Shown in pieces: positions 27,712 to 44,471 of a stretch of DNA of 64,000 nucleotides (positions are counted from its first letter, which is position 1; each line of letters opens with the position of its first letter). The notes beneath the pieces are model-generated. The model ran no database searches. It worked only from the letters and a program-made list of their open reading frames with translations, and was not told the DNA's origin. Both the position numbers and the translations under genes were made by a program. The DNA lies in the IMG/VR virus record IMGVR_UViG_3300047157_000197, positions 186,001 through 250,000 of that record. One strand, written 5' to 3'.

Positions 27712-27720
27712 TAAGTAGAT

Positions 27721-28173
27721 ATGATATTAATAGCACATAGAGGAAATATAAATGGTAAGGTTGAGAAGTTTGAAAACACTCCAAGTTACATAGATTCTGC
27801 TATTGAACAAGGTTACGATGTTGAAGTAGATTTACGATATCATCAACATGAATTTTGGTTAGGACATGATTATGCAAAATATGAAATTAATTTAAAATGG
27901 TTAACTGATAGAAAAGATTCTTTATGGATACATTGTAAAGATTTAATAACAATTGATATGTTAAGAGAATTACAGATTCATAACAAAGTTGATTTACATT
28001 ATTTTTTCCATAATGATGATGATTGTACGATAACTTCAAAAGGAGATTTGTGGGTTTATCCAGGAAAACAACCAGTAAAAAATAGTATAGCAGTAATTCC
28101 AGAATGGCATCGAGATGATGTTAGTTTATGTAAAGGAATCTGTTCAGATAATATAATAAATTTTAAAGAATGA
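27721..28173 (+). CDS. glycerophosphodiester phosphodiesterase-like (PLC-like) protein
   Basis: IAHRGN, ENT, VEVD, LGHD, WIHCK, GICSD. Confidence 0.75.
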   Translation: MILIAHRGNINGKVEKFENTPSYIDSAIEQGYDVEVDLRYHQHEFWLGHDYAKYEINLKWLTDRKDSLWIHCKDLITIDMLRELQIHNKVDLHYFFHNDDDCTITSKGDLWVYPGKQPVKNSIAVIPEWHRDDVSLCKGICSDNIINFKE

Positions 28174-28604
28174 GTAAAATAGGATTTACAGCAGGTAACT
28201 TTGATTTACTACATCCTGGTTACATTTATACTTTTGAAGAAGCAAAGAAACATTGTGATAAGTTTTTTGTATTTCTACACGCAGACCCATCTGAATATAG
28301 AAATAATAAATACAAACCAGTAGTTCCTTTATATGAAAGGTATAAAACTCTAATGGCTATTAAATACATTGATGCAGTTTATACTTACAAAACAGAGGAA
28401 GAATTATTAGATTTAATTATACATTGGAAACCTGATATAAGAATATTAGGTGAAGATTATATTGGGAAATCATTTACAGGAGATGAATTACCTATTGAAG
28501 TTATTTACACTACTCGTTCACACGAATGGTCAACAACTAAAATTAAAAATCTAATTACAAAACAAACAATTAAACAAAATCCTGATATACTAAAAGATGA
28601 ATAA
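28170..28604 (+). CDS. cytidylyltransferase (TagD/RfaE-like)
   Basis: GNFDLLHPGY (HxGH-like), GEDY, STTKIK. Confidence 0.85.
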   Translation: MSKIGFTAGNFDLLHPGYIYTFEEAKKHCDKFFVFLHADPSEYRNNKYKPVVPLYERYKTLMAIKYIDAVYTYKTEEELLDLIIHWKPDIRILGEDYIGKSFTGDELPIEVIYTTRSHEWSTTKIKNLITKQTIKQNPDILKDE

Positions 28605-29799: not shown

Positions 29800-30212
29800 C
29801 CTTATTATCATTATTGGAAAGTGATTTGCCATTTTTAATTGAAGTTAGAAATGATGAATCAACTCGTTCTCAATTAGGAAATGATTCTTTATTTACATTA
29901 GAAGATTCTACACAATGGTTTAAAAAAGAACAACCAGAGTGGTTACTTATTATAAACCATAATTTAACTAGAATCGGATACATGAGAATAGATGGTGATA
30001 CAATTGGTATTGATATTCATCCTAATTTTCGTAGAAAAGGATATGCAAGATTGGCATATCAAAAATATTTAGAAGATACTGATTATGCAGACCTTTGGGT
30101 TTTTGAAGATAATCATGCTAAGAAACTATATGAAGAATTAGGATTTGTAGAAACAGGTGAATACGAAACGTTAAGAGATAGAAAGTATTTGAAAATGATA
30201 TACGAAAAATGA
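29790..30212 (+). CDS. GNAT N-acetyltransferase (PseH-like)
   Basis: IHPNFRRKGYA, N.AKKLYEELGF. Confidence 0.8.
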   Translation: MEVTLLSLLESDLPFLIEVRNDESTRSQLGNDSLFTLEDSTQWFKKEQPEWLLIINHNLTRIGYMRIDGDTIGIDIHPNFRRKGYARLAYQKYLEDTDYADLWVFEDNHAKKLYEELGFVETGEYETLRDRKYLKMIYEK

Positions 30213-30919
30213 AAGTAGCATTAATGTTGACAGGACTTGCTAGAAAAGTTCAAGAAGGATATGATGGTTTTTGGAAATATATTATTGATAATAATGATGT
30301 GGATTTATATCTTCATGCTTGGGAATCTAAACCAGATGAAGTAACTAATAATGAAGATAGTGATATTGTACATCAAGTTTATCCAAATGCAACTTATGTT
30401 AATATTGAGAAACCTTTTAAGTTCACAAAATACAGAGAAGGTATAAAAACACCAAGAGATGATAAATCAAGACCTCTTACAGATTTTGATGTATTCAGTA
30501 ATTTTAGAAGTTTTCCTATGTATTATTCTTGGCAATCTACTTATGAAAATATCAAATCTTCAAACATTGATTATGATTGTATTATAAGAAGTAGATACGA
30601 TATTGGTGGAGATAATTTAAATATATCTGAGTTTGATTTAAATAAAATATTCACATCAAATCATCATTGGAAAAACAGTCATGTTCACGATGATAATTTT
30701 TACATATCAAATCAAAGTAATTCTGATAAAGTATTTCCTACTATATTTGAAAACATAGTTGAATTTAATAGAAGTAAAGGTATGATGGATAGTGCAGAAG
30801 AAAATCTAACTAAGTACTTAGAAAGAATAGGATTAATAAATATCTCAGAAAAATCAGATAAAATAAAATTTGATTTATTAAGAGATAATAAAGTTTGGTG
30901 GCCAAAAGATATAAAATGA
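30209..30919 (+). CDS. putative glycosyltransferase-like protein
   Basis: KVALMLTGLAR, DLYLHAW, YDCIIRSRYD. Confidence 0.55.
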   Translation: MKVALMLTGLARKVQEGYDGFWKYIIDNNDVDLYLHAWESKPDEVTNNEDSDIVHQVYPNATYVNIEKPFKFTKYREGIKTPRDDKSRPLTDFDVFSNFRSFPMYYSWQSTYENIKSSNIDYDCIIRSRYDIGGDNLNISEFDLNKIFTSNHHWKNSHVHDDNFYISNQSNSDKVFPTIFENIVEFNRSKGMMDSAEENLTKYLERIGLINISEKSDKIKFDLLRDNKVWWPKDIK

Positions 30920-31590
30920 AAATAGGAATTAACTTAGTAGGAGTATCTTATAACAATGCAATAACTGGTGGACGTTTACGAAACTATGAAGATGCAATAG
31001 AAAACTTTCATACTTACATTGTAGAACCATTTAGAGAAAAGGGATATAATGTCCAATTTTATTTATATAGTTACGAAAATGAAAAACAAGATAAGATAAT
31101 AAACGATTACAGACCTTGTATGAAATCGCAATTCGTAAAACCAGATTATAATAAATTAGGTGGTGGGACAAAAGTTTCTGAAGGATACAAAGTTATGTCA
31201 GTTAGTTATCTAAATAGTTTAGAACAATTAAAGAATCAAGATTTAGATTTAATTATATCAACTAGATACGATATTAAGTTTCTTAAAAATCCATTTGAAG
31301 AATATAATTTTGATTTTGATAAAATGAATTTCTTATGGAGAGAACCAGAACTTAAAGATTTACCATTAGTTAATGATACTTTTTTGGTATTTCCATATAA
31401 AATGTTAGATAATGTTGTTGATTCTATAATTGAAATGGAAGAAAATCCACCACAAGGTAAAAATATAGCAATGCATAATTGGTATTTACCCATGGTAAAT
31501 CAAGTTGGAGAAGATAAAGTACAATGGGTTGACGATGAATTCAGAACCGCAATACAGAATGAGTTATACATATTAACAAGAAAGACATAA
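30916..31590 (+). CDS. putative glycosyltransferase-like protein (paralogue-like of upstream gene)
   Basis: MKIGINLVG, DLIISTRYD, VNDTF; likely start at MKIG. Confidence 0.5.
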   Translation: MKIGINLVGVSYNNAITGGRLRNYEDAIENFHTYIVEPFREKGYNVQFYLYSYENEKQDKIINDYRPCMKSQFVKPDYNKLGGGTKVSEGYKVMSVSYLNSLEQLKNQDLDLIISTRYDIKFLKNPFEEYNFDFDKMNFLWREPELKDLPLVNDTFLVFPYKMLDNVVDSIIEMEENPPQGKNIAMHNWYLPMVNQVGEDKVQWVDDEFRTAIQNELYILTRKT

Positions 31591-31593
31591 TAT

Positions 31594-32352
31594 ATGAATA
31601 AATTAATAAGTGGATATTGGTGGGCATGGAAAGAGATAGAAGCAGGAAAGAAATCTATGCAAACTCTAAGAAAGTATTATCCTGATGCTGATTTGTTTAT
31701 TAATGTAGATTATGAAGGTGATGTAGATGGTTATACCAAAGTAGGTAAAGAACTAAATGCAACAGTTACTCGTAATAATTTTCAGTTAGGATATTGTGGA
31801 AACTTTGGTGATAGAGATATAGGATATGATTATTGGTCAAAAGAAAAAGCAGTAGAATGGTTAAGAGGAGTATATGATGCTTGTACTAAAACTGATTCAA
31901 AGTATATGATGTTGTTTGAAGAAGATGATTTTGTATTAAAGAACATCTCAATCTTAGATACAGATTTTTCAATAGCAATTCATCCAACTGCACCATCACC
32001 AGTTAGAATGAGACCAAATCTAATACCAAAACAGTTTTTAGATTATTCTAAAGAGATTGGTGGTATTGGAGATTGTCCTGGTTATGCAAGTGGTGGGGGA
32101 ACTATTTTTAATAGAGAACATTATATGGATAGTTACGAAAGAATATTAGATAAGTTTACAGATGTATATGATGATTTCTGTAAAATAAATAAAATATTTG
32201 GTTGGGAAGATTTTTTATTCCAATACATTTTTATGTTAGGTGGATATGAAGTTACACAAAATCATGATTTATGTGAACTATGGGAAGTACCAAACTTTGA
32301 GGGATTTGAAATATTAACTGGTTGTAAAGACCCAAACTTAATTACACTATAA
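31594..32352 (+). CDS. putative GT-A glycosyltransferase
   Basis: YMMLFEEDD, GGGTIFN, GWED. Confidence 0.55.
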   Translation: MNKLISGYWWAWKEIEAGKKSMQTLRKYYPDADLFINVDYEGDVDGYTKVGKELNATVTRNNFQLGYCGNFGDRDIGYDYWSKEKAVEWLRGVYDACTKTDSKYMMLFEEDDFVLKNISILDTDFSIAIHPTAPSPVRMRPNLIPKQFLDYSKEIGGIGDCPGYASGGGTIFNREHYMDSYERILDKFTDVYDDFCKINKIFGWEDFLFQYIFMLGGYEVTQNHDLCELWEVPNFEGFEILTGCKDPNLITL

Positions 32353-33161
32353 TGGATGATGATACTTACACAATACTAGGTTGTATTACAAAATATAAGG
32401 CAGATGATATAAGACCTTATGTAGAATCAATTGAACAGACAGGTTTTAAAGGTAGAAAAGTAATGTTGGTATATGATGTACCACAAGAAACTATTGATTA
32501 TCTTAAATCAAAAGGATGGGATTTGTTTGGAGGAGAACTTCAACAACATATAATCTTACAGAGGTTTAGAGATTTATATAAACTATTAGGTTCAGAAATA
32601 AAAGGTACAGTTATTTGGACTGATGTTAAGGATGTGATATTTCAAAAAGACCCAACTGATTGGATTGAGCATAATATGGAAGATGATATATTATCATTCT
32701 CAGAATGTATCACATTTAAAAATGACCCTTGGGCGTGTGTAAATGCAGGAACTTCTTTTCCTATGGAGTGGGAATGGTTACAAAATAAAACATCTTATTG
32801 TGCAGGAACTATCGTTGGTGATGCTTGTTATCTTAGAGATTTATTCATCGATATTTACAGATGGAGTATGACAAGTTCAAACCCAGGCCAGTTATCAGAC
32901 CAAGCAGCTTATAATGTGTTAATTAACTTACATCATATTAGTGATTGTGTTCAAACAGTAAAACAGGAAGAGGGATTTGTTACCCAATTAGGAACTGTGT
33001 TGGTAAAGAAAGATGAGTTTAAAGATGTTCTATTAGAACCAACACCAATCGTAGATGAAAACTATATAGTAAAGAATCAAAATGGAGAACCTTTCTGTTT
33101 AGTACATCAGTACGATAGAATACCAGCATTTAAAGAATTTATTTATAACAAATACAAATAA
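32352..33161 (+). CDS. putative GT-A glycosyltransferase
   Basis: WTDVKDVIFQ, CAGTIVG, DQAAYN, VHQYDR. Confidence 0.6.
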   Translation: MDDDTYTILGCITKYKADDIRPYVESIEQTGFKGRKVMLVYDVPQETIDYLKSKGWDLFGGELQQHIILQRFRDLYKLLGSEIKGTVIWTDVKDVIFQKDPTDWIEHNMEDDILSFSECITFKNDPWACVNAGTSFPMEWEWLQNKTSYCAGTIVGDACYLRDLFIDIYRWSMTSSNPGQLSDQAAYNVLINLHHISDCVQTVKQEEGFVTQLGTVLVKKDEFKDVLLEPTPIVDENYIVKNQNGEPFCLVHQYDRIPAFKEFIYNKYK

Positions 33162-34054
33162 TGAAAGTAGTAATATCAATTTTCTGTTTACCATATGAGA
33201 TAGATGATTTGGAAAATACACTAAATCAACTAAAGAAGGCATCTTATTATATAGATAAAAAAATAGATTGGTGTTTAGATGTAACGATGTGTTTGGCAGA
33301 TGATATGGTAAATTGGAATAAATCATCTTTACCAAAGAAGTTTTTTGAAGATAAATTATTAAAATTATTATCAATAACAGATTGGTGTACGAAGAATATT
33401 CAAACTTCAACAGAAATAAAAGGATGTGTATCTCAGAGAAGATATTCTTTAGAAAAACATAGAGAAGCAGATTACTTTATTTGGTTAGATACAGATATTA
33501 TATTTGATGAAAGAACGTTGTTCTATATCGAACAAAGTATAAAAGGTACAAATAAAGATTATTTACAAACAATCATTACACCAGAAATTGTTAGAGTTTG
33601 GGATAATACTTGGGATTGTATTGTAAATGAACAATTCTTAGATAAACCACTTGAATATCAAAAAACAAATGACCCTTATAAAGATAGTGGTATCAAAGGA
33701 GATATTAGTATTGTACCTGTAAATAATTCAAACTCCCCTCAATCAAGATTTAAATTTGCAGGAGGATGGTTCACTTGTATAAGTGGAAAACTTCTAAATA
33801 GAATTGGAATACCAGATTCATTTGCTCACTATGGTTATGAAGATACCTTTTTAATGGTGGGTAGTGAAAAACTCGTTAGAGAACAAAATGAAGAAATTCA
33901 TCAATTCAAAATAAAAAACCTAGTAGTTTGTGAAAACTACAAATATAGAGGACATTATCATTACCTAAATTCTCTCTCAGTTTACGATAGAAGAGAGGAA
34001 TTTAAAAAAATATCCCATGATAATTTCATATCAGAAGTAAAAATAATACAATAA
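33161..34054 (+). CDS. GT2/GT7-like glycosyltransferase
   Basis: FIWLDTD (DxD), GGWF, YGYED. Confidence 0.6.
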   Translation: MKVVISIFCLPYEIDDLENTLNQLKKASYYIDKKIDWCLDVTMCLADDMVNWNKSSLPKKFFEDKLLKLLSITDWCTKNIQTSTEIKGCVSQRRYSLEKHREADYFIWLDTDIIFDERTLFYIEQSIKGTNKDYLQTIITPEIVRVWDNTWDCIVNEQFLDKPLEYQKTNDPYKDSGIKGDISIVPVNNSNSPQSRFKFAGGWFTCISGKLLNRIGIPDSFAHYGYEDTFLMVGSEKLVREQNEEIHQFKIKNLVVCENYKYRGHYHYLNSLSVYDRREEFKKISHDNFISEVKIIQ

Positions 34055-34254: not shown

Positions 34255-34764
34255 TTGAAGTACGCTACATTAAATGTATTTAAAATATTCATTTTATGTA
34301 TCTTTGTTTTATTACCGACAGGTTCTAATGAGATACATACAAGTGATGACAACCTCATTAAAGTCGGTGAAGTGACCAACGAAATCCGAATGGGACAGTT
34401 TGCAGGTAACCGAAACCTAGCAGTTGGTGTCAAGAATATCCTCGAAGAATTATTAATGGATTTAGATTATGATTTATCAGACCAAGCATCTACGCAAATA
34501 AATGTAAGATTGGTCTTTTTTGATATAAAAAATATTGGAACATCGGTTGCGGTGTTTCATAAAGATGTTTCATTAACGCAAATTATTGCGATTGGTGAAT
34601 TAGAAGTCAAGGGAAAAGTTAAAAAACGTACTACTCAAAAAGGAACGAGTAAAACAATTTCTACTAGTACTCTTGTAGTTGCACAAGACGGAACATTTAA
34701 CCAACAAACAGCCTCAATTGCTTTAAAGAAAGTATGTGAGGCAATTATTAAGGATTTATTATGA
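34255..34764 (+). CDS. exported CsgG-like protein (short paralogue of 37825)
   Basis: hydrophobic N-terminus; NLAVGVKNILEELL vs RVGLGVTNMVIEYL; FNQQTASIALKKVCE vs FRQSAIGVTTRKALE; TTG start after AGGAG. Confidence 0.5.
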   Translation: MKYATLNVFKIFILCIFVLLPTGSNEIHTSDDNLIKVGEVTNEIRMGQFAGNRNLAVGVKNILEELLMDLDYDLSDQASTQINVRLVFFDIKNIGTSVAVFHKDVSLTQIIAIGELEVKGKVKKRTTQKGTSKTISTSTLVVAQDGTFNQQTASIALKKVCEAIIKDLL

Positions 34765-36410
34765 AAAAAATTTTATTATTATTAATTAGTGTATTTTTTA
34801 CACTATCTGTATCTGGTCAGAATGACCCCGCTGAGATAAATTATAGTCCAGTAAATACAGTAACAAAAGTAGGGGATACTTTAGTTATGAAGTTCCAATA
34901 CAACAAACAAGATGGAGGAGATTTGACATTAGCTCAATTCGATTTCGAATATAACAACAAATTGTTATCTTACATCTCAAGTACCTCACAAGCACCAACA
35001 GGTGCATCATTTGCTAGAAACAATTGGACAGGGTATAAGTTTGTACCTAAAGCAAATACATCAGAAGATGATATGGATGTACAATACACTTGGTGGAAAG
35101 ATGAAGCAGGAAATGCTTCCTATTCTACTTCTGCTGATTGGAGTGTAGAGAGAACTACAATCCAAACCTCAGCTGCATACGAAGATGGTGGAGAATTTGT
35201 AAAGTATAGCTTCAAAATAAAGGATAAGTTTGGTAGTGGGTATGATAACTACAACAATATCATTAAAGTGAATTGGGCAAACTACCAAAAAGCAGATGGA
35301 ACAAAAATTCAAACTATTAAATCACCATCTACACAATCACTAAGTGGTATCGAGGGTGGTAATGCTGGTGCATTTACTATTAACCTTAAAACTGCAAATT
35401 CAACTAAAACAGATTATTCTTATACTATTAAGAATGGTGCAGGTGAATCAGTTGCAACTGGTACTTTTGATGAAAGTGGACAAGCATCTGTAAGTGGTTT
35501 AGAAAACAACGTAACTTATACTGCTGAAGCAAACTTAGCCGAAGATGCAACTTACTTAGATGAAGTAGTTACTGTATCTGATTTGGCATTAGTATTCGCT
35601 GAAGCAATTGGAGCAGGTTCTGGTCCAAGTGGTGGTTCAACTACATTTGATTATTTCATACAAGATATAATGGGTGATGTTGTTGGTAGTGATAATGGAG
35701 TAGATTTCCAAGATTCATATGAGATACTTGCTTACCTACAAGGTGTAACAAGTGGTAATACAAACTTAATCACACAAGATGGACAAACGGAAGATTATAG
35801 TGGTATTGAATCTACATATGGTGCAGTTACTAATAATACAGTAACCTTCGCTAAATCATTCACACCAATTGATTCAGATGCTACTTCTAAAACAATTGAT
35901 TTAGCTCATGGTTTAAGAGGTGATGTAAATTTCTCTCACTCATGGGAGCCGAGTGTATCAAGTGGTGAAAAAGCAACATCAGCTCAAACATCATCATTTA
36001 GAATATCATCGGCAGCTGGTTCTAAATATAGTCAAACAGAAACAGCAAATATCGATTTAATATCTGAAATAAATGATGATGGAAGAGTAGTATTTTCAAT
36101 TAATTCTGAGATTGAAGATATGGTTGGTTCTCAGTTTAATATCGTATATGACCCTAACATATTATCTTTAGAAAATGTAATATTTGATACTGGTAATGAA
36201 ATGACTAACTTTTCAAACGTAATCGAAGCAGGGTATGTAAGAGTTGGTTCATTTGACCAAAATGTTAGTTCAACAGTTAAAGCAGGAACACCATATCAAT
36301 TAATATTTGTTCCAGTTGAAGATATATCAAATGCATCAGGTTTAATTTCGTTTAGAGTTAAAGAAGGTGTAAAAGCAGATGGAACACAAATTAATTTTAT
36401 AATACAATAA
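34761..36410 (+). CDS. secreted cohesin / dockerin-like / cohesin protein
   Basis: signal ending VSG-Q; QFDFEYNNKLL and QFNIVYDPNIL cohesin-like strands; VTVSD...GDV..NGVDFQD...GDVNFSHS dockerin-like module. Confidence 0.6.
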   Translation: MKKILLLLISVFFTLSVSGQNDPAEINYSPVNTVTKVGDTLVMKFQYNKQDGGDLTLAQFDFEYNNKLLSYISSTSQAPTGASFARNNWTGYKFVPKANTSEDDMDVQYTWWKDEAGNASYSTSADWSVERTTIQTSAAYEDGGEFVKYSFKIKDKFGSGYDNYNNIIKVNWANYQKADGTKIQTIKSPSTQSLSGIEGGNAGAFTINLKTANSTKTDYSYTIKNGAGESVATGTFDESGQASVSGLENNVTYTAEANLAEDATYLDEVVTVSDLALVFAEAIGAGSGPSGGSTTFDYFIQDIMGDVVGSDNGVDFQDSYEILAYLQGVTSGNTNLITQDGQTEDYSGIESTYGAVTNNTVTFAKSFTPIDSDATSKTIDLAHGLRGDVNFSHSWEPSVSSGEKATSAQTSSFRISSAAGSKYSQTETANIDLISEINDDGRVVFSINSEIEDMVGSQFNIVYDPNILSLENVIFDTGNEMTNFSNVIEAGYVRVGSFDQNVSSTVKAGTPYQLIFVPVEDISNASGLISFRVKEGVKADGTQINFIIQ

Positions 36411-36428
36411 TAAAAAGGAAACAGAAAA

Positions 36429-36806
36429 ATGAAAAAAATATTAACATTACTTAGTTTGGTTTTAATAATGGGTTGTTACCAAGATGATGATTTAGTAACA
36501 CTTTATCCAGACCAAGAAGTACCACAATCTTTACAGATTAAAGATTTGATTGGTATTAAATTAGAAAACACTATCGTAACTGATAGAGTTGCGATGAATG
36601 TAAAATTACCACTTGATGGTAAATATAGAATAAAGATTAGACATGGTATGACCAATGAACTAATCTCACAAGAGATGATAACTGCTGGTGAGGGTGATAA
36701 CCTTCTTAAAGTGTATGTTGCATCTTTAGAGAAAAGTGGTTATGTGATTCAATTAACAGATGAATTTCATAATATATTAGGAAATCAGTCTTTCGTAGTA
36801 AATTAA
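36429..36806 (+). CDS. small lipoprotein with T9SS-CTD-like Ig fold
   Basis: lipobox LIMG-C; G.N...Y..SLEKSGYVIQL pattern. Confidence 0.55.
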   Translation: MKKILTLLSLVLIMGCYQDDDLVTLYPDQEVPQSLQIKDLIGIKLENTIVTDRVAMNVKLPLDGKYRIKIRHGMTNELISQEMITAGEGDNLLKVYVASLEKSGYVIQLTDEFHNILGNQSFVVN

Positions 36807-36807
36807 A

Positions 36808-36945
36808 ATGTTAAATAGTATATTTTTAGTGTCAGTTGGATTTATTACAATGTGGTTAGTATGTAAGTACGAAATAACAAAATGTAAAATTGGTAAATCA
36901 TGTGATTGTAAAGAATGTAGAGAAAAAAGGAGAGCAAAATTATGA
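36808..36945 (+). CDS. small membrane protein with Cys-rich tail (45 aa, not in track)
   Basis: MLNSIFLVSVGFITMWLVCKYEITKCKIGKSCDCKECREKRRAKL*. Confidence 0.4.
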   Translation: MLNSIFLVSVGFITMWLVCKYEITKCKIGKSCDCKECREKRRAKL

Positions 36946-37244
36946 GTGAAAAAAAAGAAGGATTCTTTGCACAAATAAAGAATCAAGTAATAGCTGGGGT
37001 TGGTATAGTACTAACTACATTGGGTGGTGTTTTTATAGATGAGGTTAAATCATTTGTAGGAATAGAAGATGATTCAGAACCACAAACTGAGGTTGTACAA
37101 GAAAACAATCAATCAGTAAATGTAGAAGGACCTACTATCGTAGTAAACATACCAGAACAACAGGTAAAAGAAAAAGTAATTATCAAGGAAGTTAAAGTTC
37201 CTGTTAAGAAGAAAAAAGAAAAAGAACAAGAAATTGATTGGTAA
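36942..37244 (+). CDS. single-TM membrane protein
   Basis: VIAGVGIVLTTLGGVF helix; AGGAG upstream. Confidence 0.6.
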   Translation: MSEKKEGFFAQIKNQVIAGVGIVLTTLGGVFIDEVKSFVGIEDDSEPQTEVVQENNQSVNVEGPTIVVNIPEQQVKEKVIIKEVKVPVKKKKEKEQEIDW

Positions 37245-37262
37245 TTTAAATAAAGGAGAAAA

Positions 37263-37490
37263 ATGAGTAGTTTCAAAAAATGGTGGAAAGTAAATGGACA
37301 AGGTATCGGATTTATAGCTGGTATAGTGTTTCTAAATGCTTACTTTTTAATATTAGGTGATTTAATGAACAAACACGAATGGTTAGCTGGTGTTTGGTTA
37401 TTATGTTTCTTTGGATTTGCAGGATGGTATTCTTGGCAAATGAAGATTCATGGTTGGAGATTGCCTAAGGATATAAAAGATACCCACTAA
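37263..37490 (+). CDS. small two-TM membrane protein
   Basis: two hydrophobic segments; AAGGAG upstream. Confidence 0.55.
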   Translation: MSSFKKWWKVNGQGIGFIAGIVFLNAYFLILGDLMNKHEWLAGVWLLCFFGFAGWYSWQMKIHGWRLPKDIKDTH

Positions 37491-37526
37491 CGTTTAATAT
37501 TAATACATGGAGAACAATGATAAACA

Positions 37527-37721
37527 ATGGAAGTAATAAAACAAATTTTCGGAGATAAAATGTCAGACTATAAAATAGTTGATATTATGTTGAAAATATG
37601 GGTTGCTGGTTTATTATCTATGGTTGTACTTGGTTTAGTTGCTGTGATTAGTCACATCATCATGAACCCATCATCAGTAGATAACGCAACATTTGGTGTA
37701 TTTGATACACTAGGGAGTTAA
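37527..37721 (+). CDS. small membrane protein
   Basis: IWVAGLLSMVVLGLVAVISHII helix. Confidence 0.55.
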   Translation: MEVIKQIFGDKMSDYKIVDIMLKIWVAGLLSMVVLGLVAVISHIIMNPSSVDNATFGVFDTLGS

Positions 37722-37824: not shown

Positions 37825-38544
37825 ATGAGAAATATATTTATTTTAATTTTATGTGTATTATTCACACAAAATACTATTGCACAAACTGTTGGTAAAATCA
37901 AGGCAGAAACATATCAAGCTGAATTTGAAAAAAAGAAATCAATTGATGATGTATCTGATTACGATGGTCCATATATTCCTATAGCTTTACTTAATATATC
38001 TGCTAGTGATGGGGTTTACGAAATGTGGCCTGAGTTAAAGGATGCTAGAGTAGGTTTAGGTGTAACAAACATGGTAATAGAGTACTTGGATTGGACAAAC
38101 AGATTCGAGTTCGTAGAGGAGAAGTCAGAGATTAAGGATAGAATGAAAAATCAATGGGTTGCATCAAGAAAGGGTGTTTCTCAAAATGAAGTTTATGGAA
38201 TGGGTAAAGTAATGTTGGCGAATTATTTCGTTACAATAGAGATTTACGATTTCTCAGTTTCAGAAGATGAGGTTTTATCTTTAAAAGATGGTTCTAAACA
38301 AACACAAACAACTCGTTTAGGGTTGCAAGTTCGTTTTACTAATGCCGAGAATGGTACTTACTTTGTAGGTTCTGGTCTAGGTGAAGCAAATACAGTTAAG
38401 ACTCAAGAGGGTTTGCTGGGATTAGATTTGGAGGAAATAAACTTCAGACAATCAGCAATTGGGGTAACTACCAGAAAAGCATTAGAAACGGCTTCAGCAA
38501 GAATAGTAGCAAGAATGATTAGAAAAAAAATATTTCCAAACTAA
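37825..38544 (+). CDS. CsgG/HfaB-family (curli secretion pore-like) exported protein
   Basis: signal ending TIA-Q; LGVTNMVIEYL..TNRFEFVE, ANYFVTIEIYDF, QVRFTNAENG match the CsgG-like fold pattern. Confidence 0.7.
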   Translation: MRNIFILILCVLFTQNTIAQTVGKIKAETYQAEFEKKKSIDDVSDYDGPYIPIALLNISASDGVYEMWPELKDARVGLGVTNMVIEYLDWTNRFEFVEEKSEIKDRMKNQWVASRKGVSQNEVYGMGKVMLANYFVTIEIYDFSVSEDEVLSLKDGSKQTQTTRLGLQVRFTNAENGTYFVGSGLGEANTVKTQEGLLGLDLEEINFRQSAIGVTTRKALETASARIVARMIRKKIFPN

Positions 38545-38547
38545 TGA

Positions 38548-40323
38548 ATGAGAAAACTACTATCGATACTTGCATTTTGGTTCATAACTAATCTTAGTTA
38601 TGGACAAACATTCACACAGACATTTGTAGATAGATGTACTGGTGAAGTACAAGTTGTTACCGCTAATTTTACAAGTGGTTCTGCTATCGTATCCTTTTAC
38701 AACGAAGCTAAATTATTCACATACACACAATATACTAATGGTGAACTCCAACAATGGTTAGTTCAGAAATATGCATGGTGGGCTGCACTATCCCCATGTT
38801 CATCTGCGAGTAACGCAACCAACAACGCTAATAATACTGCAAACAACGCAACCAATAATACCAATTCAGGTTCAAGTGGTTCTAGTGGTGGTGGAGATAG
38901 TGGTTCAAGTGGTTCATCAGGTGGTAGTGGAGATAGTGGTGGTGGAAGTGGAGATTCAGGCGGTGGAGGTTCTGATGGTGGAAGTGGAGATTCTGGTGGC
39001 GGTGGTTCTGATGGCTCTGATGGTGGTGGTGGAGATTCTGATGGAGGAGGAGGCGATTCCGATGGCGGGGGTGGTGATTCCGATGGTGGCGGTGATTCCG
39101 ATGGTGGAGATAGTGATGGTGGGTCTGGTGATTCCGATTCTGATGGTGGAGATAGTGATGGTGGAGATAGTGATTCTGATTCTGATGGTGGAGATAGTGA
39201 TTCCGATTCCGATAGTGATTCTGATTCCGATAGTGATTCTGATTCCGATAGTGATTCTGATTCTGACTCTGATGGCGATAGTGATGATGATTCTGATTCT
39301 GACTCTGATGGCGATAGTGATGATGATTCTGATGGGGATTCTGATGATGATTCCGATGGAGATAGTGATGATGAATCTGATGATGATTCCGATAGTGATG
39401 AAGATTCTGATGAATCTGATGAAGATAGTGAAGAAAGTGATGAGGAAGATAGTGAAGAAGAATCCGATGAAGAAGAAAAGGAAGAGGAAGAAGAAAGTGA
39501 TGAAGAAGAGGAAGAAGAAGAAAAAGAGGAAGAAGAGGAAGAAGACGATGAAGAAGAAGATGAGGAAGAAGAAGATGAGGAAGATGAGGAAGATGAGGAA
39601 GACGAAAAAGATGAAGAAGATGAGGAAGAAGAAGAAGAAAAGAAAAAGAAATTTATGCCAATAGTATTGAAGGCAGATGTAATGTCAATGCAAGCTCTAA
39701 CAAGAGAATACAACCAAGTTCTTGCAATTGGAGCATCACAAGCATCAATCTATGGTGATATAACAAATACAGCAACTTTACAAGTATATGATAACTTAAA
39801 ACAAGTTGGGTTATCATTGGGTAGAAGTAAAGTAAGTTTGAATGAAAATTATCAAGTAACTTGGGTAGATGGAGCAAACGTATCTTATATGAGAAATTAT
39901 CAGATGAACTCAACTACATTATCTCTCAGTAGAATGAAACCAATGGGTAAGTATGGAACTGTTGGATTGGGTGTTAGTTATTCATTTATGTTTGGTAAAG
40001 ATGCTCTTGGAAATACAATGCCAAAAATGGGTACTATGGGATATAATGTTCTTTATACAAATATGGTAAAAATAAATGATAGAATAATGTACACACCAGC
40101 ATTGATTGGTGCACAAAACCCATTATCTTATACAGAAAAAGTTGAGGGGTTCGATGCCTTTTCATCAACATCAAAAGATTTTATAGGAATCCTTGCAAAT
40201 TCCTTTACAATACAATTAACAAAAAGTTTTTCGTTTAATGCAGGTTGGACGATAATTTATAGTAGTAATGAGTTTGTTCCAATTATGAATTCGTTTATGA
40301 TAGGAGCAAAGTTACCCTTTTAA
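38548..40323 (+). CDS. secreted protein: small N-domain, Gly/Ser/Asp/Glu low-complexity stalk, C-terminal outer-membrane beta-barrel
   Basis: signal ending SYG-Q; ~280-aa GS/SD/DE tract; amphipathic strands ending in ...GAKLPF. Confidence 0.7.
   Translation: MRKLLSILAFWFITNLSYGQTFTQTFVDRCTGEVQVVTANFTSGSAIVSFYNEAKLFTYTQYTNGELQQWLVQKYAWWAALSPCSSASNATNNANNTANNATNNTNSGSSGSSGGGDSGSSGSSGGSGDSGGGSGDSGGGGSDGGSGDSGGGGSDGSDGGGGDSDGGGGDSDGGGGDSDGGGDSDGGDSDGGSGDSDSDGGDSDGGDSDSDSDGGDSDSDSDSDSDSDSDSDSDSDSDSDSDGDSDDDSDSDSDGDSDDDSDGDSDDDSDGDSDDESDDDSDSDEDSDESDEDSEESDEEDSEEESDEEEKEEEEESDEEEEEEEKEEEEEEDDEEEDEEEEDEEDEEDEEDEKDEEDEEEEEEKKKKFMPIVLKADVMSMQALTREYNQVLAIGASQASIYGDITNTATLQVYDNLKQVGLSLGRSKVSLNENYQVTWVDGANVSYMRNYQMNSTTLSLSRMKPMGKYGTVGLGVSYSFMFGKDALGNTMPKMGTMGYNVLYTNMVKINDRIMYTPALIGAQNPLSYTEKVEGFDAFSSTSKDFIGILANSFTIQLTKSFSFNAGWTIIYSSNEFVPIMNSFMIGAKLPF
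38810..39650 (+). repeat. coding low-complexity tandem repeat (GGDSD, DS, DDSD, EEED)
   Basis: degenerate GATTCY/GATAGT/GAAGAA codon repeats. Confidence 0.9.
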
Positions 40324-40332
40324 GGAGATAAT

Positions 40333-40863
40333 ATGAGAAAAATAGATTTTAAATTAGTAGTAATAGGTATATTGATAGGAGTATCAGTATGGCAATTTTT
40401 AAACCCAACAATACAAGAAGTAGAAAAGATTAAAGAAATCGAAGTACTTCAGACTGTAATTGATAGTATCTATGTTGAAAAACTGATAGAGAAGAAAGTT
40501 TTTGTACCAAAGTATATTACAAAAATAAAAAGAGATACTATAATCAAAGAAGTAATTGTAGAAAAAATTAAAACTAAAATCAAAAAGGTTTATATAGATA
40601 AACCATATGAAGTAATCGTACCGAAGTATGAATTACCAGAATCAAAGTGGTATGCTGGATTTGCATATCAATGGGATATGGAAAATTACTTTAGTGGAGC
40701 AAATGTACAAGTTTTACATAAATTCAAAAATGATAAAATGTTTAGTATAGATGTTGGATTTAGAAACGATTTAATAGATTTAGAAAATAATCTTGGAAAA
40801 TTAAGACCTTATGTTGGAGGAACAATATATTTCAGATTAGATAAACCAAAAGATAATTTTTAA
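40333..40863 (+). CDS. membrane-anchored protein with C-terminal beta strands (possible spanin-like)
   Basis: N-terminal TM; IDSIYVEK/RDTIIKEV extended segment; aromatic beta strands. Confidence 0.4.
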   Translation: MRKIDFKLVVIGILIGVSVWQFLNPTIQEVEKIKEIEVLQTVIDSIYVEKLIEKKVFVPKYITKIKRDTIIKEVIVEKIKTKIKKVYIDKPYEVIVPKYELPESKWYAGFAYQWDMENYFSGANVQVLHKFKNDKMFSIDVGFRNDLIDLENNLGKLRPYVGGTIYFRLDKPKDNF

Positions 40864-42956
40864 TGAAGAAACTTCTTTTCATATTATTACTGTTACCAAC
40901 TTTAGTATTTGGTCAGACCGGTGCTGGTTATACTCCAAGTGGTGAAGGAAAAATAAATTATAAATCCTACAAAACTCACTCTGGTAATGGTGCAGCATCA
41001 TCTTATAATAGTGTATCATATAGTGGTGGAGCAGGTTCAACTGCTGAGTTTGATGCAATGGTTGATACAAACCAACCAGGTACAACATTAACTCATGTTG
41101 GTGAAGCAACACCATGGAGTTCAGGTGGTTTAAATGGAGGACACCCACCGAGATGGGGTAATTCGTATTTTGCAATAGTTTATTCAGGTTGGTTCAAACC
41201 AAATAAAAATGGAACTTATAATTTCAAAACTTATGCAGATGATTCATCAGAAACTAGATATAGAGAAGTAGGAACTACTACTTGGCAAACAATTACATTT
41301 CAATGGGGTTGTTGTTCTAATCGATATGGTACTGCAAATTTAGATAATACTAAATGGTATGAATTTGAATTTAGATACCAAGAATATGGTGGAGGGGATT
41401 ATTACTATTTTGGTTATTCAATACCAGCAAATTCAAGTTCACCAAATTACAATTGGATAAGTTCCAATCATCAATTTGGAACTTGGACAAATGTAGACCC
41501 AAGTGGTGGAACAACTACTACAACAGAACCCGAAGTTGATTTAGATTTAGAATTCCATTCTCAATTAGCACCAGAACAATATAGATTTGGTGTGTATTAT
41601 GATGCATCAAATGAACAAGATGGTTCAACATATTTCAATACTTCTACAATGAATTCAAAATATTATTTAGATGATGATGGAAGTAAAGATATAACTGATT
41701 ATCTAAATTTGGTTAAGATGACTGATGGTTTGAAAGCAACCACAGAAAGTGGAAGTGTAGAGTGGGTAGTTTTATATCCATATGATTCTACAAACGATAG
41801 ACATCGAATACTGATTGATGGTAGAGAATTTACTGCTACTAATCCTGATACAGACCCAAATGATTTAAAATCATTACAATTACTTGATTTATATGATGGA
41901 ACAATTACTGTTCATAGTGTAAGTGAGGGTTCGGGTGGTTGGCAACAATATTACATACCAGGTAATCTAACAACTGCTATATCTAATAGTTCATATGGAA
42001 GTGGTGTGATTAGAAATGCTGGTAGTTATTTTGGTATTAGAGCAGAGTTCTCATTTGAAGATGTTGAAATATATAAAGGACATAAAATAGTTGTTAATAA
42101 TCCATCTGATAATATAGAAGGGTGGACAGCTGAAGAATTTATGGATGATTACATTACAGTTGCAGATGTAGTTGCAGGATTTAATGAATTAGCAGGTGGT
42201 GGAATATTCGGTGGATATAAAGGAGATTTGAATGGAGTTCAATTACAAAACTCAGATGTTAATCAAGATGGTGAGTTTGATTTTCAAGATAGTCAAATAG
42301 GATTGGCTTTCTTAAATGGTGATGATACTCCTTTTAATGGTTACCTACAAGAGATAATGAGAATAGTTCCTAAATCAGAATACGATAATACTACAACTAC
42401 TAATTGGAAAACACAAACAAATAAATCACCATCAACAAATTTTACCTTTAGTATTATAGATACGATACAAACCTTAGAATATAAAGTTTCATTTATAGGT
42501 GATGTAAATCTTTCACATTCTGCACCACAATCAACAAGTTCACCTGGTACTCAATCAACATCAGTCAGAAATTCATCTTCTCAAAAATCAAGTGAATTAG
42601 AAGTGTTGTTAGATATTGGTATGGAAGAAGATAAACTTGTGGTAACATTAGATGTACCACAAAACAATCATAACATTGTAGGTTCTGAATTTAGAATAGG
42701 ATATGATAACACTAGAGTGGAGTTTGATAGAATAGAAACTACTTCTAACTTACAATCATTTTCAGCTGAAAGAACAAACTACATAAAGTTAGGTTCTATA
42801 TCTACTGATGGTTCTCAAAATTTAAATGGTGGTGTACAATATAAGATTTACTTTTCACCACAACAAACTTTTGAATCTATATTAGGATTACTATCAGTTA
42901 CAAAATCAGAATTAGTAAAACAAAATGGGGGTGGAATAGACCATAAAATAAAATGA
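40863..42956 (+). CDS. secreted PA14 / dockerin-like / cohesin protein
   Basis: signal ending VFG-Q; PA14 pattern (FAIVYSGWF..GTYNFKTYADDS..YQEYGGG); DVNQDGEFDFQD EF-like loop; GDVNLSHS; EFRIGYDNTRV cohesin-like. Confidence 0.65.
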   Translation: MKKLLFILLLLPTLVFGQTGAGYTPSGEGKINYKSYKTHSGNGAASSYNSVSYSGGAGSTAEFDAMVDTNQPGTTLTHVGEATPWSSGGLNGGHPPRWGNSYFAIVYSGWFKPNKNGTYNFKTYADDSSETRYREVGTTTWQTITFQWGCCSNRYGTANLDNTKWYEFEFRYQEYGGGDYYYFGYSIPANSSSPNYNWISSNHQFGTWTNVDPSGGTTTTTEPEVDLDLEFHSQLAPEQYRFGVYYDASNEQDGSTYFNTSTMNSKYYLDDDGSKDITDYLNLVKMTDGLKATTESGSVEWVVLYPYDSTNDRHRILIDGREFTATNPDTDPNDLKSLQLLDLYDGTITVHSVSEGSGGWQQYYIPGNLTTAISNSSYGSGVIRNAGSYFGIRAEFSFEDVEIYKGHKIVVNNPSDNIEGWTAEEFMDDYITVADVVAGFNELAGGGIFGGYKGDLNGVQLQNSDVNQDGEFDFQDSQIGLAFLNGDDTPFNGYLQEIMRIVPKSEYDNTTTTNWKTQTNKSPSTNFTFSIIDTIQTLEYKVSFIGDVNLSHSAPQSTSSPGTQSTSVRNSSSQKSSELEVLLDIGMEEDKLVVTLDVPQNNHNIVGSEFRIGYDNTRVEFDRIETTSNLQSFSAERTNYIKLGSISTDGSQNLNGGVQYKIYFSPQQTFESILGLLSVTKSELVKQNGGGIDHKIK

Positions 42957-43291
42957 GAAAGTATATAGTATTAATATTGTTCGTTATACTATCTTGTCAA
43001 CCAGAAGAGTTGATGATTGTAGAACCACTACCACAATACGAAATGATATTTGAAGAATCTGAATCATCAGTAACAGATGGACAAGAATTTTCTTTTGAAA
43101 TAATATCAGAAGAAGAACATCATTTAGTTATATCAAAAGATGGTTCTGTTATTACAAAAGAATCATTTTTACCTACACTTGAATTGAATACAAGAAAGAT
43201 TTATACTAAATCACTTCCTACTGATTTGTTACAATTGGAACTAATTAACTCTAATGGTGTTATAAAATCAACTTTTATACAAATATATTAA
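42953..43291 (+). CDS. small lipoprotein, paralogue of 36429
   Basis: lipobox VILS-C; ITKESF...NTRKIYTKSLP..LQLEL. Confidence 0.55.
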   Translation: MRKYIVLILFVILSCQPEELMIVEPLPQYEMIFEESESSVTDGQEFSFEIISEEEHHLVISKDGSVITKESFLPTLELNTRKIYTKSLPTDLLQLELINSNGVIKSTFIQIY

Positions 43292-43823: not shown

Positions 43824-44471
43824 ATGTTCATATTCACAGAAGAAAATATAAAAGATATTAAGAATGCCGTTTACACAACAGATGGTATAAAGGATAAGCA
43901 TGTGAAAAAGATTGAAGGAATCAAAGATGGTTTGTTCAAAGATTTTAATTACTCTAAATACAAAGTAAAAAATCCCCCTAAAAATAATTCAATGGTAGTT
44001 TATAATGAACTACAATTCTTAAAAGATTTACCAGAAGATGATGCATATGTTGAAGAACATGATGATATTGAAAAAGTATTTGAGCAAGTTTGTAAAGAAA
44101 ACAACGTAGAATATCCAAAGGAACTCGTAGAGAGTTTAATCAAATCAGCCGCTGGTATTATATTAGATTTAAAATATCACTATAATAGACCAAGACCATT
44201 TCAACTTTCTAGCCATTATAATATTAAATTAGGTGAAAAAGTATTGGAATCAATGAAAACACCATCATACCCATCAGGACATTCAGCACAAGGTATTTTA
44301 GTAGGGAAGGTACTACAAACTAAATTACCAATCAATACAGATGCCTTTTTGGAAGCAGGAAAACGAATATCATATAGTAGAAATATAGGAAGAGCACACT
44401 ATCCATCTGATTCAAGAATGGGTGAGATTATTGGTGATGTTATGTTTAACCATATAAAGCACAAGATTTAA
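43824..44471 (+). CDS. PAP2/vanadium-haloperoxidase-superfamily phosphatase
   Basis: KYHYNRPRP, SYPSGH, SRNIGRAHYPSD. Confidence 0.88.
   Translation: MFIFTEENIKDIKNAVYTTDGIKDKHVKKIEGIKDGLFKDFNYSKYKVKNPPKNNSMVVYNELQFLKDLPEDDAYVEEHDDIEKVFEQVCKENNVEYPKELVESLIKSAAGIILDLKYHYNRPRPFQLSSHYNIKLGEKVLESMKTPSYPSGHSAQGILVGKVLQTKLPINTDAFLEAGKRISYSRNIGRAHYPSDSRMGEIIGDVMFNHIKHKI

What the first reader, a model, noticed from the sequence alone, without database searches (positions are those of the whole stretch)
38548..40323. Outer-membrane protein with a ~280-residue compositional-gradient stalk (Asn, Gly/Ser, Ser-Asp, Asp/Glu, Glu)
Seen: after a ~65-aa two-Cys N-domain, the sequence grades smoothly through NNA/T, GSSG, GGDSD, (DS)n, DDSD, EESDEE and poly-E, then KKKK and a beta-barrel ending in Phe. 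Synonymous codons vary, so this is protein-level selection rather than simple slippage. Established: staphylococcal Sdr/Clf Ser-Asp repeats are glycosylated stalks, and Asp/Ser-rich tracts bind Ca. Inference: a flexible-to-extended polyanionic spacer that displays the N-domain or tethers it to the adjacent CsgG-like pore, and a possible substrate of the upstream glycosyltransferases.
Basis: partly seen in the sequence, partly recalled or inferred. Interest (0 to 1): 0.62.

Follow-up and report, generated by a model that had tools for sequence, protein, structure and literature searches.

The report
Phage outer-membrane barrel on graded acidic leash
A large marine phage of Flavobacteria encodes an outer-membrane barrel protein that holds a small conserved head domain on a long disordered tether. 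The tether's chemistry changes stepwise from neutral to strongly acidic, the same order recurs across a whole phage-only protein family, and no database describes it.

Summary
ORF 38548-40323 (+) encodes 591 aa:
- a Bacteroidota-type signal peptide;
- a 65-aa head with two invariant Cys;
- a 285-aa disordered tether grading N/A/T > G/S > G/D/S > (DS)13 > D-rich > D/E/S > poly-E > KKKK (net charge -129);
- a C-terminal domain that AlphaFold2 folds (pLDDT 89) as a 12-stranded outer-membrane barrel. Its best structural matches are autotransporter translocators, KdgM and FapF (Z 18-20).

- The window lies in a 276-kb marine phage record whose nearest cultured relative infects Flavobacterium.
- The protein belongs to an unannotated family seen so far only in phage or metagenomic DNA (about 124 clusters at 50% identity). 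Head, tether and barrel are all conserved.
- The tether always runs in the same order (Q/A < T/N < S/G < D/E < K, in 70 of 78 proteins), although its sequence cannot be aligned and its length varies from 76 to 324 aa.

The gene always follows a highly conserved secreted protein that is CsgG-like by language-model features only. Both sit in an 8-10 gene envelope module.

Independent seawater metagenomes tile most of the tract exactly, so it is not an assembly artefact.

Whether the head faces the periplasm (FapF-like, slightly favoured) or the cell surface (autotransporter-like) is unresolved. A link to the upstream glycosyltransferases has no support.

The parts
38548..38604 (+). Sec signal peptide (aa 1-19). 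Cleavage would expose the invariant Gln20.
   Evidence: Sequence MRKLLSILAFWFITNLSYG|Q. Gln20 is invariant in 46 homologues. AF2 gives a helix at aa 2-16. An N-terminal Gln after type I signal peptidase cleavage is the Bacteroidetes Q-rule (PMC5837995).
38605..38802 (+). Head domain (aa 20-85): four-strand beta meander plus two helices, with an invariant Cys30/Cys84 pair
   Evidence: AF2 on the full-length protein gives strands 21-27, 34-40, 45-50 and 53-58 and helices 59-63 and 66-81, at pLDDT 63-82. Mean column identity is 69%, with 21 invariant columns including both Cys. No Pfam, NCBIfam or PDB sequence match.
38803..39639 (+). Graded disordered tether (aa 86-364): N/A/T 86-106, G/S to G/D/S 107-215, (DS)13 216-242, D-rich 243-283, D/E/S 284-310, E-rich 311-364
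   Evidence: Composition by windows. pLDDT is below 50 over aa 104-361. Imperfect tandem arrays. Net charge -129, rising toward the barrel. Exact-match contig pieces come from independent metagenomes, except 39464-39655, which the tool skipped.
39640..39657 (+). Lys cluster KKKK (aa 365-368) plus F-M, immediately before the barrel
   Evidence: At least 3 K/R occur in the 12 residues before the barrel in 81 of 91 family members where the junction could be located.
39658..40323 (+). 12-stranded outer-membrane beta-barrel (aa 371-591), ending K-L-P-F, plus the stop codon
   Evidence: AF2 on alignment A1: pLDDT 89.3, pTM 0.76, 12 long strands. Foldseek against the PDB: FapF E 6e-7, then NanC, KdgM, invasin and NalP. 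VIA-align: NalP Z 19.7, KdgM 19.7, EstA 19.3, FapF 18.7.
37825..38544 (+). Upstream partner gene: 239-aa secreted protein, CsgG/HfaB-like by features only. It ends 4 bp before the target.
   Evidence: It keeps 77-92% identity in every related locus, even where the barrel is only 40% identical. Atlas features score 0.94 to CsgG clusters. JGI names some homologues CsgG. No Pfam CsgG hit.
40333..40863 (+). Downstream gene: 176 aa, with an N-terminal transmembrane segment, a K/I/E/V-rich stretch and a beta-rich C-terminal domain
   Evidence: Sequence read directly. Found at 46-78% identity at the same position in most related loci. No family match.
34255..37721 (+). Upstream half of the conserved envelope module: a 169-aa conserved protein, a 549-aa secreted cohesin-like protein, a 125-aa lipoprotein, and three small transmembrane proteins (100, 75 and 64 aa)
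   Evidence: Synteny table over loci L002-L029. Two sub-threshold Cohesin matches lie inside 34761-36410. Signal, lipobox and transmembrane segments were read.
40863..43291 (+). Downstream module genes: a 697-aa secreted protein with weak GLEYA/PA14 and dockerin-like matches, and a 112-aa lipoprotein
   Evidence: Present in a subset of related loci.

Best explanation
This is a real gene of a roughly 276-kb marine phage of Flavobacteriia.

Proposed mechanism, step by step:
- The product is exported by Sec and cleaved before the invariant Gln20 (inferred from sequence).
- Its C-terminal 12-stranded barrel is inserted into the host outer membrane (the fold is shown; the location is inferred from the fold and the C-terminal Phe).
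- In standard barrels the first strand starts on the periplasmic side. The Lys cluster, the tether and the head therefore hang into the periplasm, as in FapF (inferred; this is the default topology).
- The Lys cluster sits at the anionic inner leaflet.
- The adjoining Glu/Asp-rich part is kept extended by self-repulsion. In many relatives this part is an E/K-rich stretch that I read as helix-prone. It pushes away from the membrane.
- The Gly/Ser part gives slack.
- The neutral Q/A/N/T neck carries the disulfide-bonded head.
- The head is thus held on a long leash, where it can engage a partner from the same conserved module. The leading candidate is the highly conserved CsgG-like protein. Other candidates are the inner-membrane-anchored proteins of the module.

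Selection keeps the order of compositions. Within each zone, length and sequence drift by in-frame slippage.
For: - Barrel fold.
- Disordered tether, and no confident pore-spanning helix before strand 1. AF2 gives only a 9-residue helix (aa 357-365) at pLDDT about 50.
[quoted passage not shown] Its N-terminus was shown experimentally to be periplasmic (PMC5557850, read).
- The head has an invariant Cys pair 54 residues apart. Disulfide-bonded passengers are often poorly exported by autotransporter barrels (PMC1533851).
- The family-wide order Q/A .12-.14 < T/N .30-.33 < S/G .49-.52 < D/E .70-.73 < K .85 holds in 70 of 78 proteins, and in remote members.
- A K/R cluster sits at the junction in 81 of 91 proteins.
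- Synteny with the CsgG-like gene and with membrane proteins is constant.
- The head and the CsgG-like protein are the two best-conserved parts.
- In-frame length variants occur in natural populations.
Against: - Orientation was not tested, and nothing here measures it.
- Tether length varies four-fold, from 76 to 324 aa. That is odd for something spanning a periplasm of fixed width and is typical of surface stalks.
- Five of the eight best structural matches are autotransporter translocators.
- The domain order is that of a type Va autotransporter.
- Other module proteins look like extracellular lectin, cohesin or dockerin types.
- The head/CsgG-like complex job gave no answer.
- The CsgG assignment itself is unconfirmed.
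Confidence: 0.42

Rival explanations
1. A minimal phage-encoded autotransporter for surface display. The barrel exports its own N-terminal part from C to N. The most acidic segment, next to the barrel, leaves first. Charge repulsion drives it outward and pulls the rest through. The Lys cluster stays at the periplasmic mouth as a stop. The head folds and oxidises outside. The result is a polyanionic stalk that shows the head beyond the LPS/glycan layer. There it could dock the module's cohesin/dockerin/PA14-like proteins, or it could mask receptors against superinfection.
For: - Domain order is signal peptide, passenger, then C-terminal 12-stranded barrel.
- The best Z-scores include NalP 19.7, EstA 19.3, BrkA 18.7, AIDA-I 18.3 and Hbp 17.7.
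- BFVD holds phage proteins named as autotransporter beta-domain, with TMq 0.69.
- Acidic residues are critical for autotransporter secretion of a disordered passenger, and natural passengers are mostly acidic (PMC4174580).
- The gradient puts the most acidic zone where export would start.
- The tether is length-variable and rich in T/S/D/E, as surface stalks are.
- Lectin, cohesin and dockerin-like neighbours, and a Cohesin plus T9SS-sorting-domain protein in the syntenic immuto module.
Against: - No match to the Pfam Autotransporter model, in the protein or in the genome.
- AF2 predicts no confident pore helix.
- The invariant 54-residue disulfide loop in the head is of a kind that often hampers this route.
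- The immuto homologue's tether is nearly neutral, so acidity is not universal in the wider family.
Confidence: 0.35
2. The barrel is the working part: a phage-made pore or porin that changes outer-membrane permeability or helps lysis, together with the CsgG-like protein and the small membrane proteins. The tether would then be a tolerated, slippage-driven spacer with no specific role.
For: - KdgM and NanC porins are among the best fold matches.
- Phage CsgG/CsgF pores in pelagimyophages and in the methylophage Melnitz have been proposed to aid uptake or lysis (PMC7029224, PMC9004378).
- Small holin-like transmembrane proteins and a TM-plus-beta protein flank the pair.
- Tandem-repeat structure and in-frame indels show active slippage.
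Against: - The head is more conserved than the barrel.
- Head, ordered tether and Lys cluster persist down to the most remote members found among 1.84 billion representatives.
- Neutral slippage would not keep the same order of zones in lineages whose tethers cannot be aligned.
- No endolysin is adjacent.
Confidence: 0.13
3. The tract is an assembly or gene-calling artefact, and the barrel is a separate gene.
For: No single laid contig spans the whole tether, and 39464-39655 was skipped by the read tool. Shadow ORFs exist in other frames.
Against: - One uninterrupted frame.
- The same three-part protein occurs in 77 metagenomic clusters, 22 IMG/VR loci and a cultured, completely sequenced Flavobacterium phage.
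- Exact-match pieces come from independent runs.
- The longest exact repeat is 46 bp.
Confidence: 0.02

Closest known systems
FapF (Pseudomonas functional-amyloid secretion channel; PDB 5O65/5O67/5O68)
   Same: Both have a signal peptide, an N-terminal domain, a disordered linker and a C-terminal 12-stranded barrel. FapF is the top Foldseek hit (E 6e-7, TMq 0.67-0.73) and scores Z 18.7 over 216 residues. Like this gene, it sits beside genes of a secretion-type module.
   Different: FapF's N-domain is a trimeric coiled coil, its linker is 42 residues, and a 13-residue helix plugs its barrel. Here the head is a beta-sheet/helix domain with a disulfide. The tether is 76-324 residues and compositionally ordered, and no plug is predicted. 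There is no sequence similarity and no fap operon.
Type Va autotransporter translocator domains (NalP, EstA, BrkA, AIDA-I, Hbp, EspP)
   Same: The domain order is the same, and so is the 12-stranded barrel with short loops. Z is 17.7-19.7. The N-terminal part is acidic.
   Different: There is no Pfam PF03797 match and no predicted pore helix. The passenger is a 65-aa head on a disordered chain, not a beta-helix. The gene is encoded by a phage of Bacteroidota.
Staphylococcal Sdr/Clf Ser-Asp repeat stalks
   Same: Both have an uninterrupted (DS)n run encoded by an 18-bp unit that mixes TCN and AGY serine codons. That shared unit explains the blastn hits to Staphylococcus phage records. The presumed role as an extended acidic spacer is also shared.
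   Different: The Ser-Asp run is only about 27 residues of a 285-residue graded tract. It is absent from most relatives. It recurs in a distantly related family member, L028, whose barrel is 40% identical. The anchor is an outer-membrane barrel, not LPXTG. No evidence of glycosylation was found.
Phage-encoded outer-membrane proteins and CsgG/CsgF of marine myophages
   Same: Large phages encode many beta-barrel outer-membrane proteins, including TonB-dependent receptors (preprint 10.64898/2026.10.24.761521). Pelagimyophages and Melnitz carry a curli-type CsgG/CsgF cluster of unknown role.
   Different: That survey's main text does not mention CsgG, disordered or low-complexity regions, or autotransporter-type barrels. 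The proteobacterial-phage CsgG is recognisable by sequence, whereas the neighbour here is not.

Membership tests
Type Va autotransporter | C-terminal 12-stranded outer-membrane beta-barrel | tested here: met
   AF2 pLDDT 89 with 12 long strands. NalP Z 19.7, 206 residues aligned, rmsd 2.9.
Type Va autotransporter | Sequence match to the Autotransporter beta-domain model (PF03797) | tested here: not met
   No Pfam family for aa 366-591 at E up to 10. No PF03797 match in the whole phage genome.
Type Va autotransporter | Alpha-helical linker filling the barrel pore | tested here: inconclusive
   AF2 on the full-length protein gives only a helix at aa 357-365, at pLDDT about 50. Coordinates could not be inspected.
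Type Va autotransporter | N-terminal passenger exposed on the cell surface | not testable with these tools
   Needs protease shaving or antibody accessibility on infected cells.
FapF family | 12-stranded barrel preceded by a disordered linker and an N-terminal domain | tested here: met
   FapF's layout is from PMC5557850.
FapF family | N-terminal trimeric coiled coil and helical plug | tested here: not met
   The head is four strands plus two helices with a disulfide, and no confident plug is predicted.
FapF family | fap operon context / sequence homology | tested here: not met
   A profile search of PDB sequences found nothing at E up to 10. The neighbours are unrelated to Fap proteins.
KdgM/NanC porins (PF06178) | Stand-alone 12-stranded porin with a family sequence match | tested here: not met
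   The fold is similar: KdgM Z 19.7, NanC Z 16.0. But there is no Pfam match, and this protein has a 350-aa N-terminal extension.
Sdr/Clf Ser-Asp repeat proteins | Long Ser-Asp dipeptide repeat | tested here: met
   (DS)13 at aa 216-242, in an 18-bp codon unit.
Sdr/Clf Ser-Asp repeat proteins | LPXTG sortase anchor and Gram-positive wall context | tested here: not met
   The C-terminus is an outer-membrane barrel ending in Phe.
CsgG family (for the neighbour 37825-38544) | Match to the CsgG model PF03783 | tested here: not met
   No hit for five family members at E up to 10. No hit in the whole genome. No PDB sequence hit.
CsgG family (for the neighbour 37825-38544) | Lipoprotein signal (lipobox Cys) | tested here: not met
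   The signal peptide ends ...TIAQ|T. The only Cys lies in the hydrophobic core and is not conserved in homologues.
CsgG family (for the neighbour 37825-38544) | CsgG-like fold forming an oligomeric channel | not tested
   There are only leads: Atlas features 0.94 with 181 shared and JGI automatic names.

The most novel reading that the evidence does not exclude
The family is a phage-built, self-exporting surface anchor. Its intrinsically disordered passenger carries a built-in charge gradient: most acidic next to the barrel, neutral at the far end, with a Lys stop at the junction. That gradient acts as an electrostatic ratchet for energy-free passage across the outer membrane. The exported head then serves as the docking point for the module's cohesin/dockerin/lectin-like proteins. 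The infected Flavobacterium would thus be re-coated with a phage-specified surface scaffold.
Probability: 0.2. Interest if true: 0.85.

Novelty: new variant of a known kind. Interest (0 to 1): 0.64.

Why it matters
Disordered linkers are usually treated as interchangeable spacers. Here the order of compositional zones along the chain is conserved over deep divergence, while the sequence is not. This gives a natural system for asking what a charge or composition gradient does.

The family recurs in seawater metagenomes. It always travels with a very abundant, highly conserved CsgG-like phage protein (more than 6,000 clusters).

A cultured phage-host pair carries a distant homologue: Flavobacterium phage immuto on Flavobacterium sp. 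LMO8. That makes the questions testable.

The family also extends the recent picture of large phages remodelling the host envelope. This genome carries a TonB-dependent receptor, a glycan cluster and a PAP2 phosphatase.

Tried and rejected
- Pfam, NCBIfam and PHROGs scans of the whole protein and of each domain gave no real family. The only PHROG hit, phrog_1028 head maturation protease at aa 252-444 (E 2e-4), lies wholly in the acidic tract and is compositional.
- Profile searches of PDB sequences with the barrel and the head gave nothing, or chance-level MS2 coat hits at E 0.018.
- tblastn of the barrel against 50,697 phage records found no match. The distant immuto homologue was found by synteny and confirmed pairwise (E 4e-5).
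- blastn hits to Staphylococcus phage records cover only the Ser-Asp codon repeat.
- The pattern-based scan of 185,579 bacterial and archaeal species genomes found no relative. Its sensitivity is limited.
- Complex prediction of the head (aa 21-90) with the mature CsgG-like neighbour gave no answer: score 0.00, and the partner's own fold was uncertain. This counts neither for nor against binding.
- The CsgG Pfam model on the genome found nothing. The T9SS sorting-domain model also found nothing.
- A crude reading of lumen-facing residues from strand alternation gave a T/G/S/Q/N/M-rich lining of net charge +3, and +2 to +6 across the family. Strand register is too uncertain for this to decide whether an acidic chain sits in the pore.
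- The Bacteroidota O-glycosylation sequon count was 5 observed against 46 in shuffles. Shuffling destroys the gradient, so only the absence of any sequon in this protein is used.
- RNA runs hold 9-18% of the sampled words. Only one (X15) was laid; its short pieces are mostly 90-95% identical. This does not show transcription.
Full report
**What is there.**

The frame 38548-40323 (+) is open for 591 codons.
- a hydrophobic signal peptide ending SYG|Q;
- a 65-aa region with Cys30 and Cys84;
- a tract that passes through N/A/T (86-106), G/S and G/D/S (107-215), an uninterrupted (DS)13 (216-242), D-rich DDSD-type repeats (243-283), D/E/S (284-310) and E-rich (311-364);
- KKKK (365-368);
- a beta-rich 221-aa domain ending LPF.

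The tether has net charge -129. The charge per residue rises from -0.14 to -0.74 from the first to the last third.

Serine is encoded by interleaved AGY (24) and TCN (41) codons. The Ser-Asp run uses an 18-bp unit, GAT AGT GAT TCT GAT TCC. Tandem Repeats Finder shows many imperfect arrays. The tract therefore bears the marks of both slippage and selection on the protein.

**Where it is.**

The window is bases 186001-250000 of a 275,970-bp IMG/VR virus record that CheckV rates as complete. It has about 30% G+C, and all long ORFs lie on one strand. The window encodes:
- a family B DNA polymerase;
- a SusC-like TonB-dependent receptor;
- radical-SAM enzymes and methyltransferases;
- a long sugar-nucleotide/glycosyltransferase cluster;
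- a PAP2 phosphatase.

Three things point to a Bacteroidota (Flavobacteriia) host. The signal peptides expose Gln, which is the Bacteroidetes Q-rule (PMC5837995). The TonB-dependent receptor is of the SusC type. The only cultured relative of the module is Flavobacterium phage immuto. Fourteen seawater, marine or viral DNA runs hold 70-79% of the sampled words of this gene.

**The barrel.**

AlphaFold2 on a 48-sequence alignment of the last 221 residues gives pLDDT 89.3, pTM 0.76 and twelve long strands.

Foldseek against the PDB puts FapF first (E 6e-7), followed by NanC, KdgM, invasin, NalP, BrkA and EspP.

An independent all-against-representatives alignment gives these Z-scores:

| Match | Z |
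|---|---|
| NalP | 19.7 |
| KdgM | 19.7 |
| EstA | 19.3 |
| COG4313 channel | 19.0 |
| FapF | 18.7 |
| BrkA | 18.7 |
| AIDA-I | 18.3 |
| Hbp | 17.7 |
| NanC | 16.0 |
| intimin | 15.6 |

All of these are 12-stranded outer-membrane barrels. There is no sequence-level membership in any of these families.

**The rest of the chain.**

A full-length model gives the following:
- The head is four beta strands (21-27, 34-40, 45-50, 53-58) followed by two helices (59-63, 66-81), at pLDDT 63-82.
- A low-confidence helix covers the N/A/T neck.
- pLDDT is below 50 from aa 104 to 361.
- Before the barrel there is only a 9-residue helix, at pLDDT about 50.

No confident plug or pore helix is therefore predicted. 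I could not inspect coordinates.

**A family, not a single gene.**

A word-seeded search with the barrel found 77 clusters of 381-585 aa, none with a Pfam domain. An exhaustive HMMER profile search of 1.84 billion representatives found only 124 clusters at E up to 1e-3. IMG/VR gave 22 loci. A pattern scan of 185,579 prokaryotic species genomes gave none.

Nearly every full-length member has the same build, down to the weakest hits. Two hits, P0106 and P0125, lack the head in the sequence recovered. The build is:
- a signal peptide;
- a head with the motif TQTxxDxC and a second Cys about 50 residues on;
- a polar low-complexity tether;
- a K/R cluster;
- the barrel.

The head is better conserved than the barrel, at 69% against 56% mean column identity. 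The tether cannot be aligned, and its length runs from 76 to 324 residues.

Even so, the mean relative positions of residue types are the same everywhere:

| Residue | Mean relative position |
|---|---|
| A | 0.12 |
| Q | 0.14 |
| T | 0.30 |
| N | 0.33 |
| S | 0.49 |
| G | 0.52 |
| D | 0.70 |
| E | 0.73 |
| K | 0.85 |

The order Q<T<S<E<K holds in 70 of 78 proteins. At least three K/R occupy the last 12 residues before the barrel in 81 of 91 members.

The G/S/D expansion and the Ser-Asp run are specific to this phage's near relatives (L008-L010, L013, L016). A Ser-Asp run also occurs in L028, a family member whose barrel is only 40% identical. The immuto homologue has the head, a nearly neutral S/G/T/N/Q tether, a KKK cluster and the barrel. 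What is conserved is the order of zones. The extreme acidity is a feature of the marine clade.

**Not an artefact.**

The longest exact repeat in the gene is 46 bp, and 771 of 825 tether 31-mers are unique. Contigs from three independent DNA runs tile 38300-39463 and 39656-40600, many with no differences. They also show 3-bp in-frame insertions and deletions, and a 174-bp skip (a multiple of three) whose intervening letters the tool reports as not known.

The tool skipped 39464-39655, the GAA-rich run, and no piece spans the whole tether. The total length therefore rests on the original assembly.

**Context.**

The gene starts 4 bp after a 239-aa secreted protein and ends 10 bp before a 176-aa protein. 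That downstream protein has an N-terminal membrane anchor and a beta-rich end.

Across about 25 related loci the order is kept: 169 aa / 549 aa / 125-aa lipoprotein / small membrane proteins / 239 aa / this gene / 176 aa. The 239-aa gene also sits immediately upstream of a remote family member (L031) and in immuto.

The 239-aa protein keeps 77-92% identity where the barrel has dropped to 40%. Its own family has more than 6,000 clusters. Language-model features and some JGI names liken it to CsgG/HfaB. The CsgG Pfam model does not match it, and it lacks a lipobox.

The 549-aa and 697-aa module proteins carry weak cohesin, dockerin and GLEYA/PA14 signals. In immuto the syntenic gene has a clear Cohesin domain plus a T9SS sorting domain.

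**How it probably works.**

Shown:
- the signal peptide;
- the conserved head;
- the disordered, ordered, polyanionic tether;
- the Lys junction;
- the 12-stranded barrel;
- the fixed partnership with the CsgG-like gene.

Inferred: the barrel anchors the chain in the host outer membrane, and the tether holds the head at a distance from it.

I slightly favour a periplasmic head, as shown for FapF, which has the same layout (PMC5557850). Three points support this:
- it is the default topology for an N-terminal extension of an even-stranded barrel;
- no pore helix is predicted;
- an invariant long-range disulfide is of a kind that often hinders autotransport (PMC1533851).

The rival is a minimal autotransporter. 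It is supported by four points:
- the domain order and the best Z-scores;
- the known dependence of disordered-passenger secretion on acidic residues (PMC4174580);
- the four-fold length variation;
- the extracellular look of other module proteins.

Under that rival, the gradient has a natural reading: the most acidic zone is exported first and the Lys cluster acts as a stop. I give 0.42 to the periplasmic reading and 0.35 to the autotransporter reading. The smaller alternatives are a pore with a tolerated spacer (0.13) and an artefact (0.02).

**Comparison and novelty.**

Phage-encoded outer-membrane barrels and TonB-dependent receptors have just been surveyed in huge phages (preprint 10.64898/2026.10.24.761521). 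CsgG/CsgF clusters are known in pelagimyophages and Melnitz, with unknown function.

Neither body of work describes this head-tether-barrel family or an ordered tether. Pfam, NCBIfam and PHROGs have no model for it.

It is therefore a new variant of a known kind: a phage outer-membrane protein with an autotransporter/FapF-class barrel. Its unusual feature is a conserved compositional order in a disordered region.

The glycosyltransferase idea is not supported.

Noticed in passing
window 10051-12759 (+): The phage encodes a 902-aa SusC-like TonB-dependent receptor (CarboxypepD_reg, Plug and barrel domains). A 71%-identical copy lies near the same module in related phage loci L004 and L023.
   Followed up: partly
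window 18692-34054 (+) and 43824-44471 (+): A long sugar-nucleotide/glycan cluster: two GT4 enzymes, an epimerase, a Glyco_trans_1_2 protein, a HAD plus nucleotidyl-transferase fusion and a DegT aminotransferase. There is also a PAP2 phosphatase, which travels with the envelope module in many relatives.
   Followed up: partly
window 34761-36410 and 40863-42956; L007:4361-5089: The 549-aa and 697-aa secreted module proteins give weak cohesin, dockerin and GLEYA/PA14 signals. In Flavobacterium phage immuto the syntenic gene 15 has a clear Cohesin domain plus a T9SS C-terminal sorting domain, which marks it as a phage-encoded T9SS cargo.
   Followed up: partly
window 37825-38544 (+): The 239-aa neighbour belongs to a very large and very conserved family: more than 6,000 clusters, with the top 120 at 77-97% identity, from many aquatic metagenomes. 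It has no Pfam domain, though JGI sometimes names it CsgG.
   Followed up: partly
window 36942-37721 and 40333-40863: Three small membrane proteins (100 aa with one TM, 75 aa with two TM, 64 aa with one TM) and a 176-aa protein (N-terminal TM, K/I/E/V-rich stretch, beta-rich end) flank the pair. They could be inner-membrane partners or a lysis-type cassette.
   Followed up: no
window 38763-39713 (-) and 38771-39664 (+): Long shadow ORFs in other frames lie inside the low-complexity tract. They are by-products of the repeat composition, not genes.
   Followed up: yes
window 39150-39315: blastn matches to two Staphylococcus phage records fall only on the GAT-TCN-GAT-AGT Ser-Asp codon repeat. The similarity is at codon level and is not homology.
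   Followed up: partly
window 38935-39411: Marine metagenome contigs carry length variants of the tether: 3-bp insertions at 38975 and 39084, 3-bp deletions at 38935/38940 and 39408/39411, and a 174-bp skip (a multiple of three) from 38999 to 39174. This points to length polymorphism in natural populations.
   Followed up: partly
L028 (IMGVR_UViG_3300025849_003104), upstream of 6001: A family member whose barrel is only 40% identical also has a long (DS)n run at the same relative position in its tether. That suggests the run arose independently.
   Followed up: no
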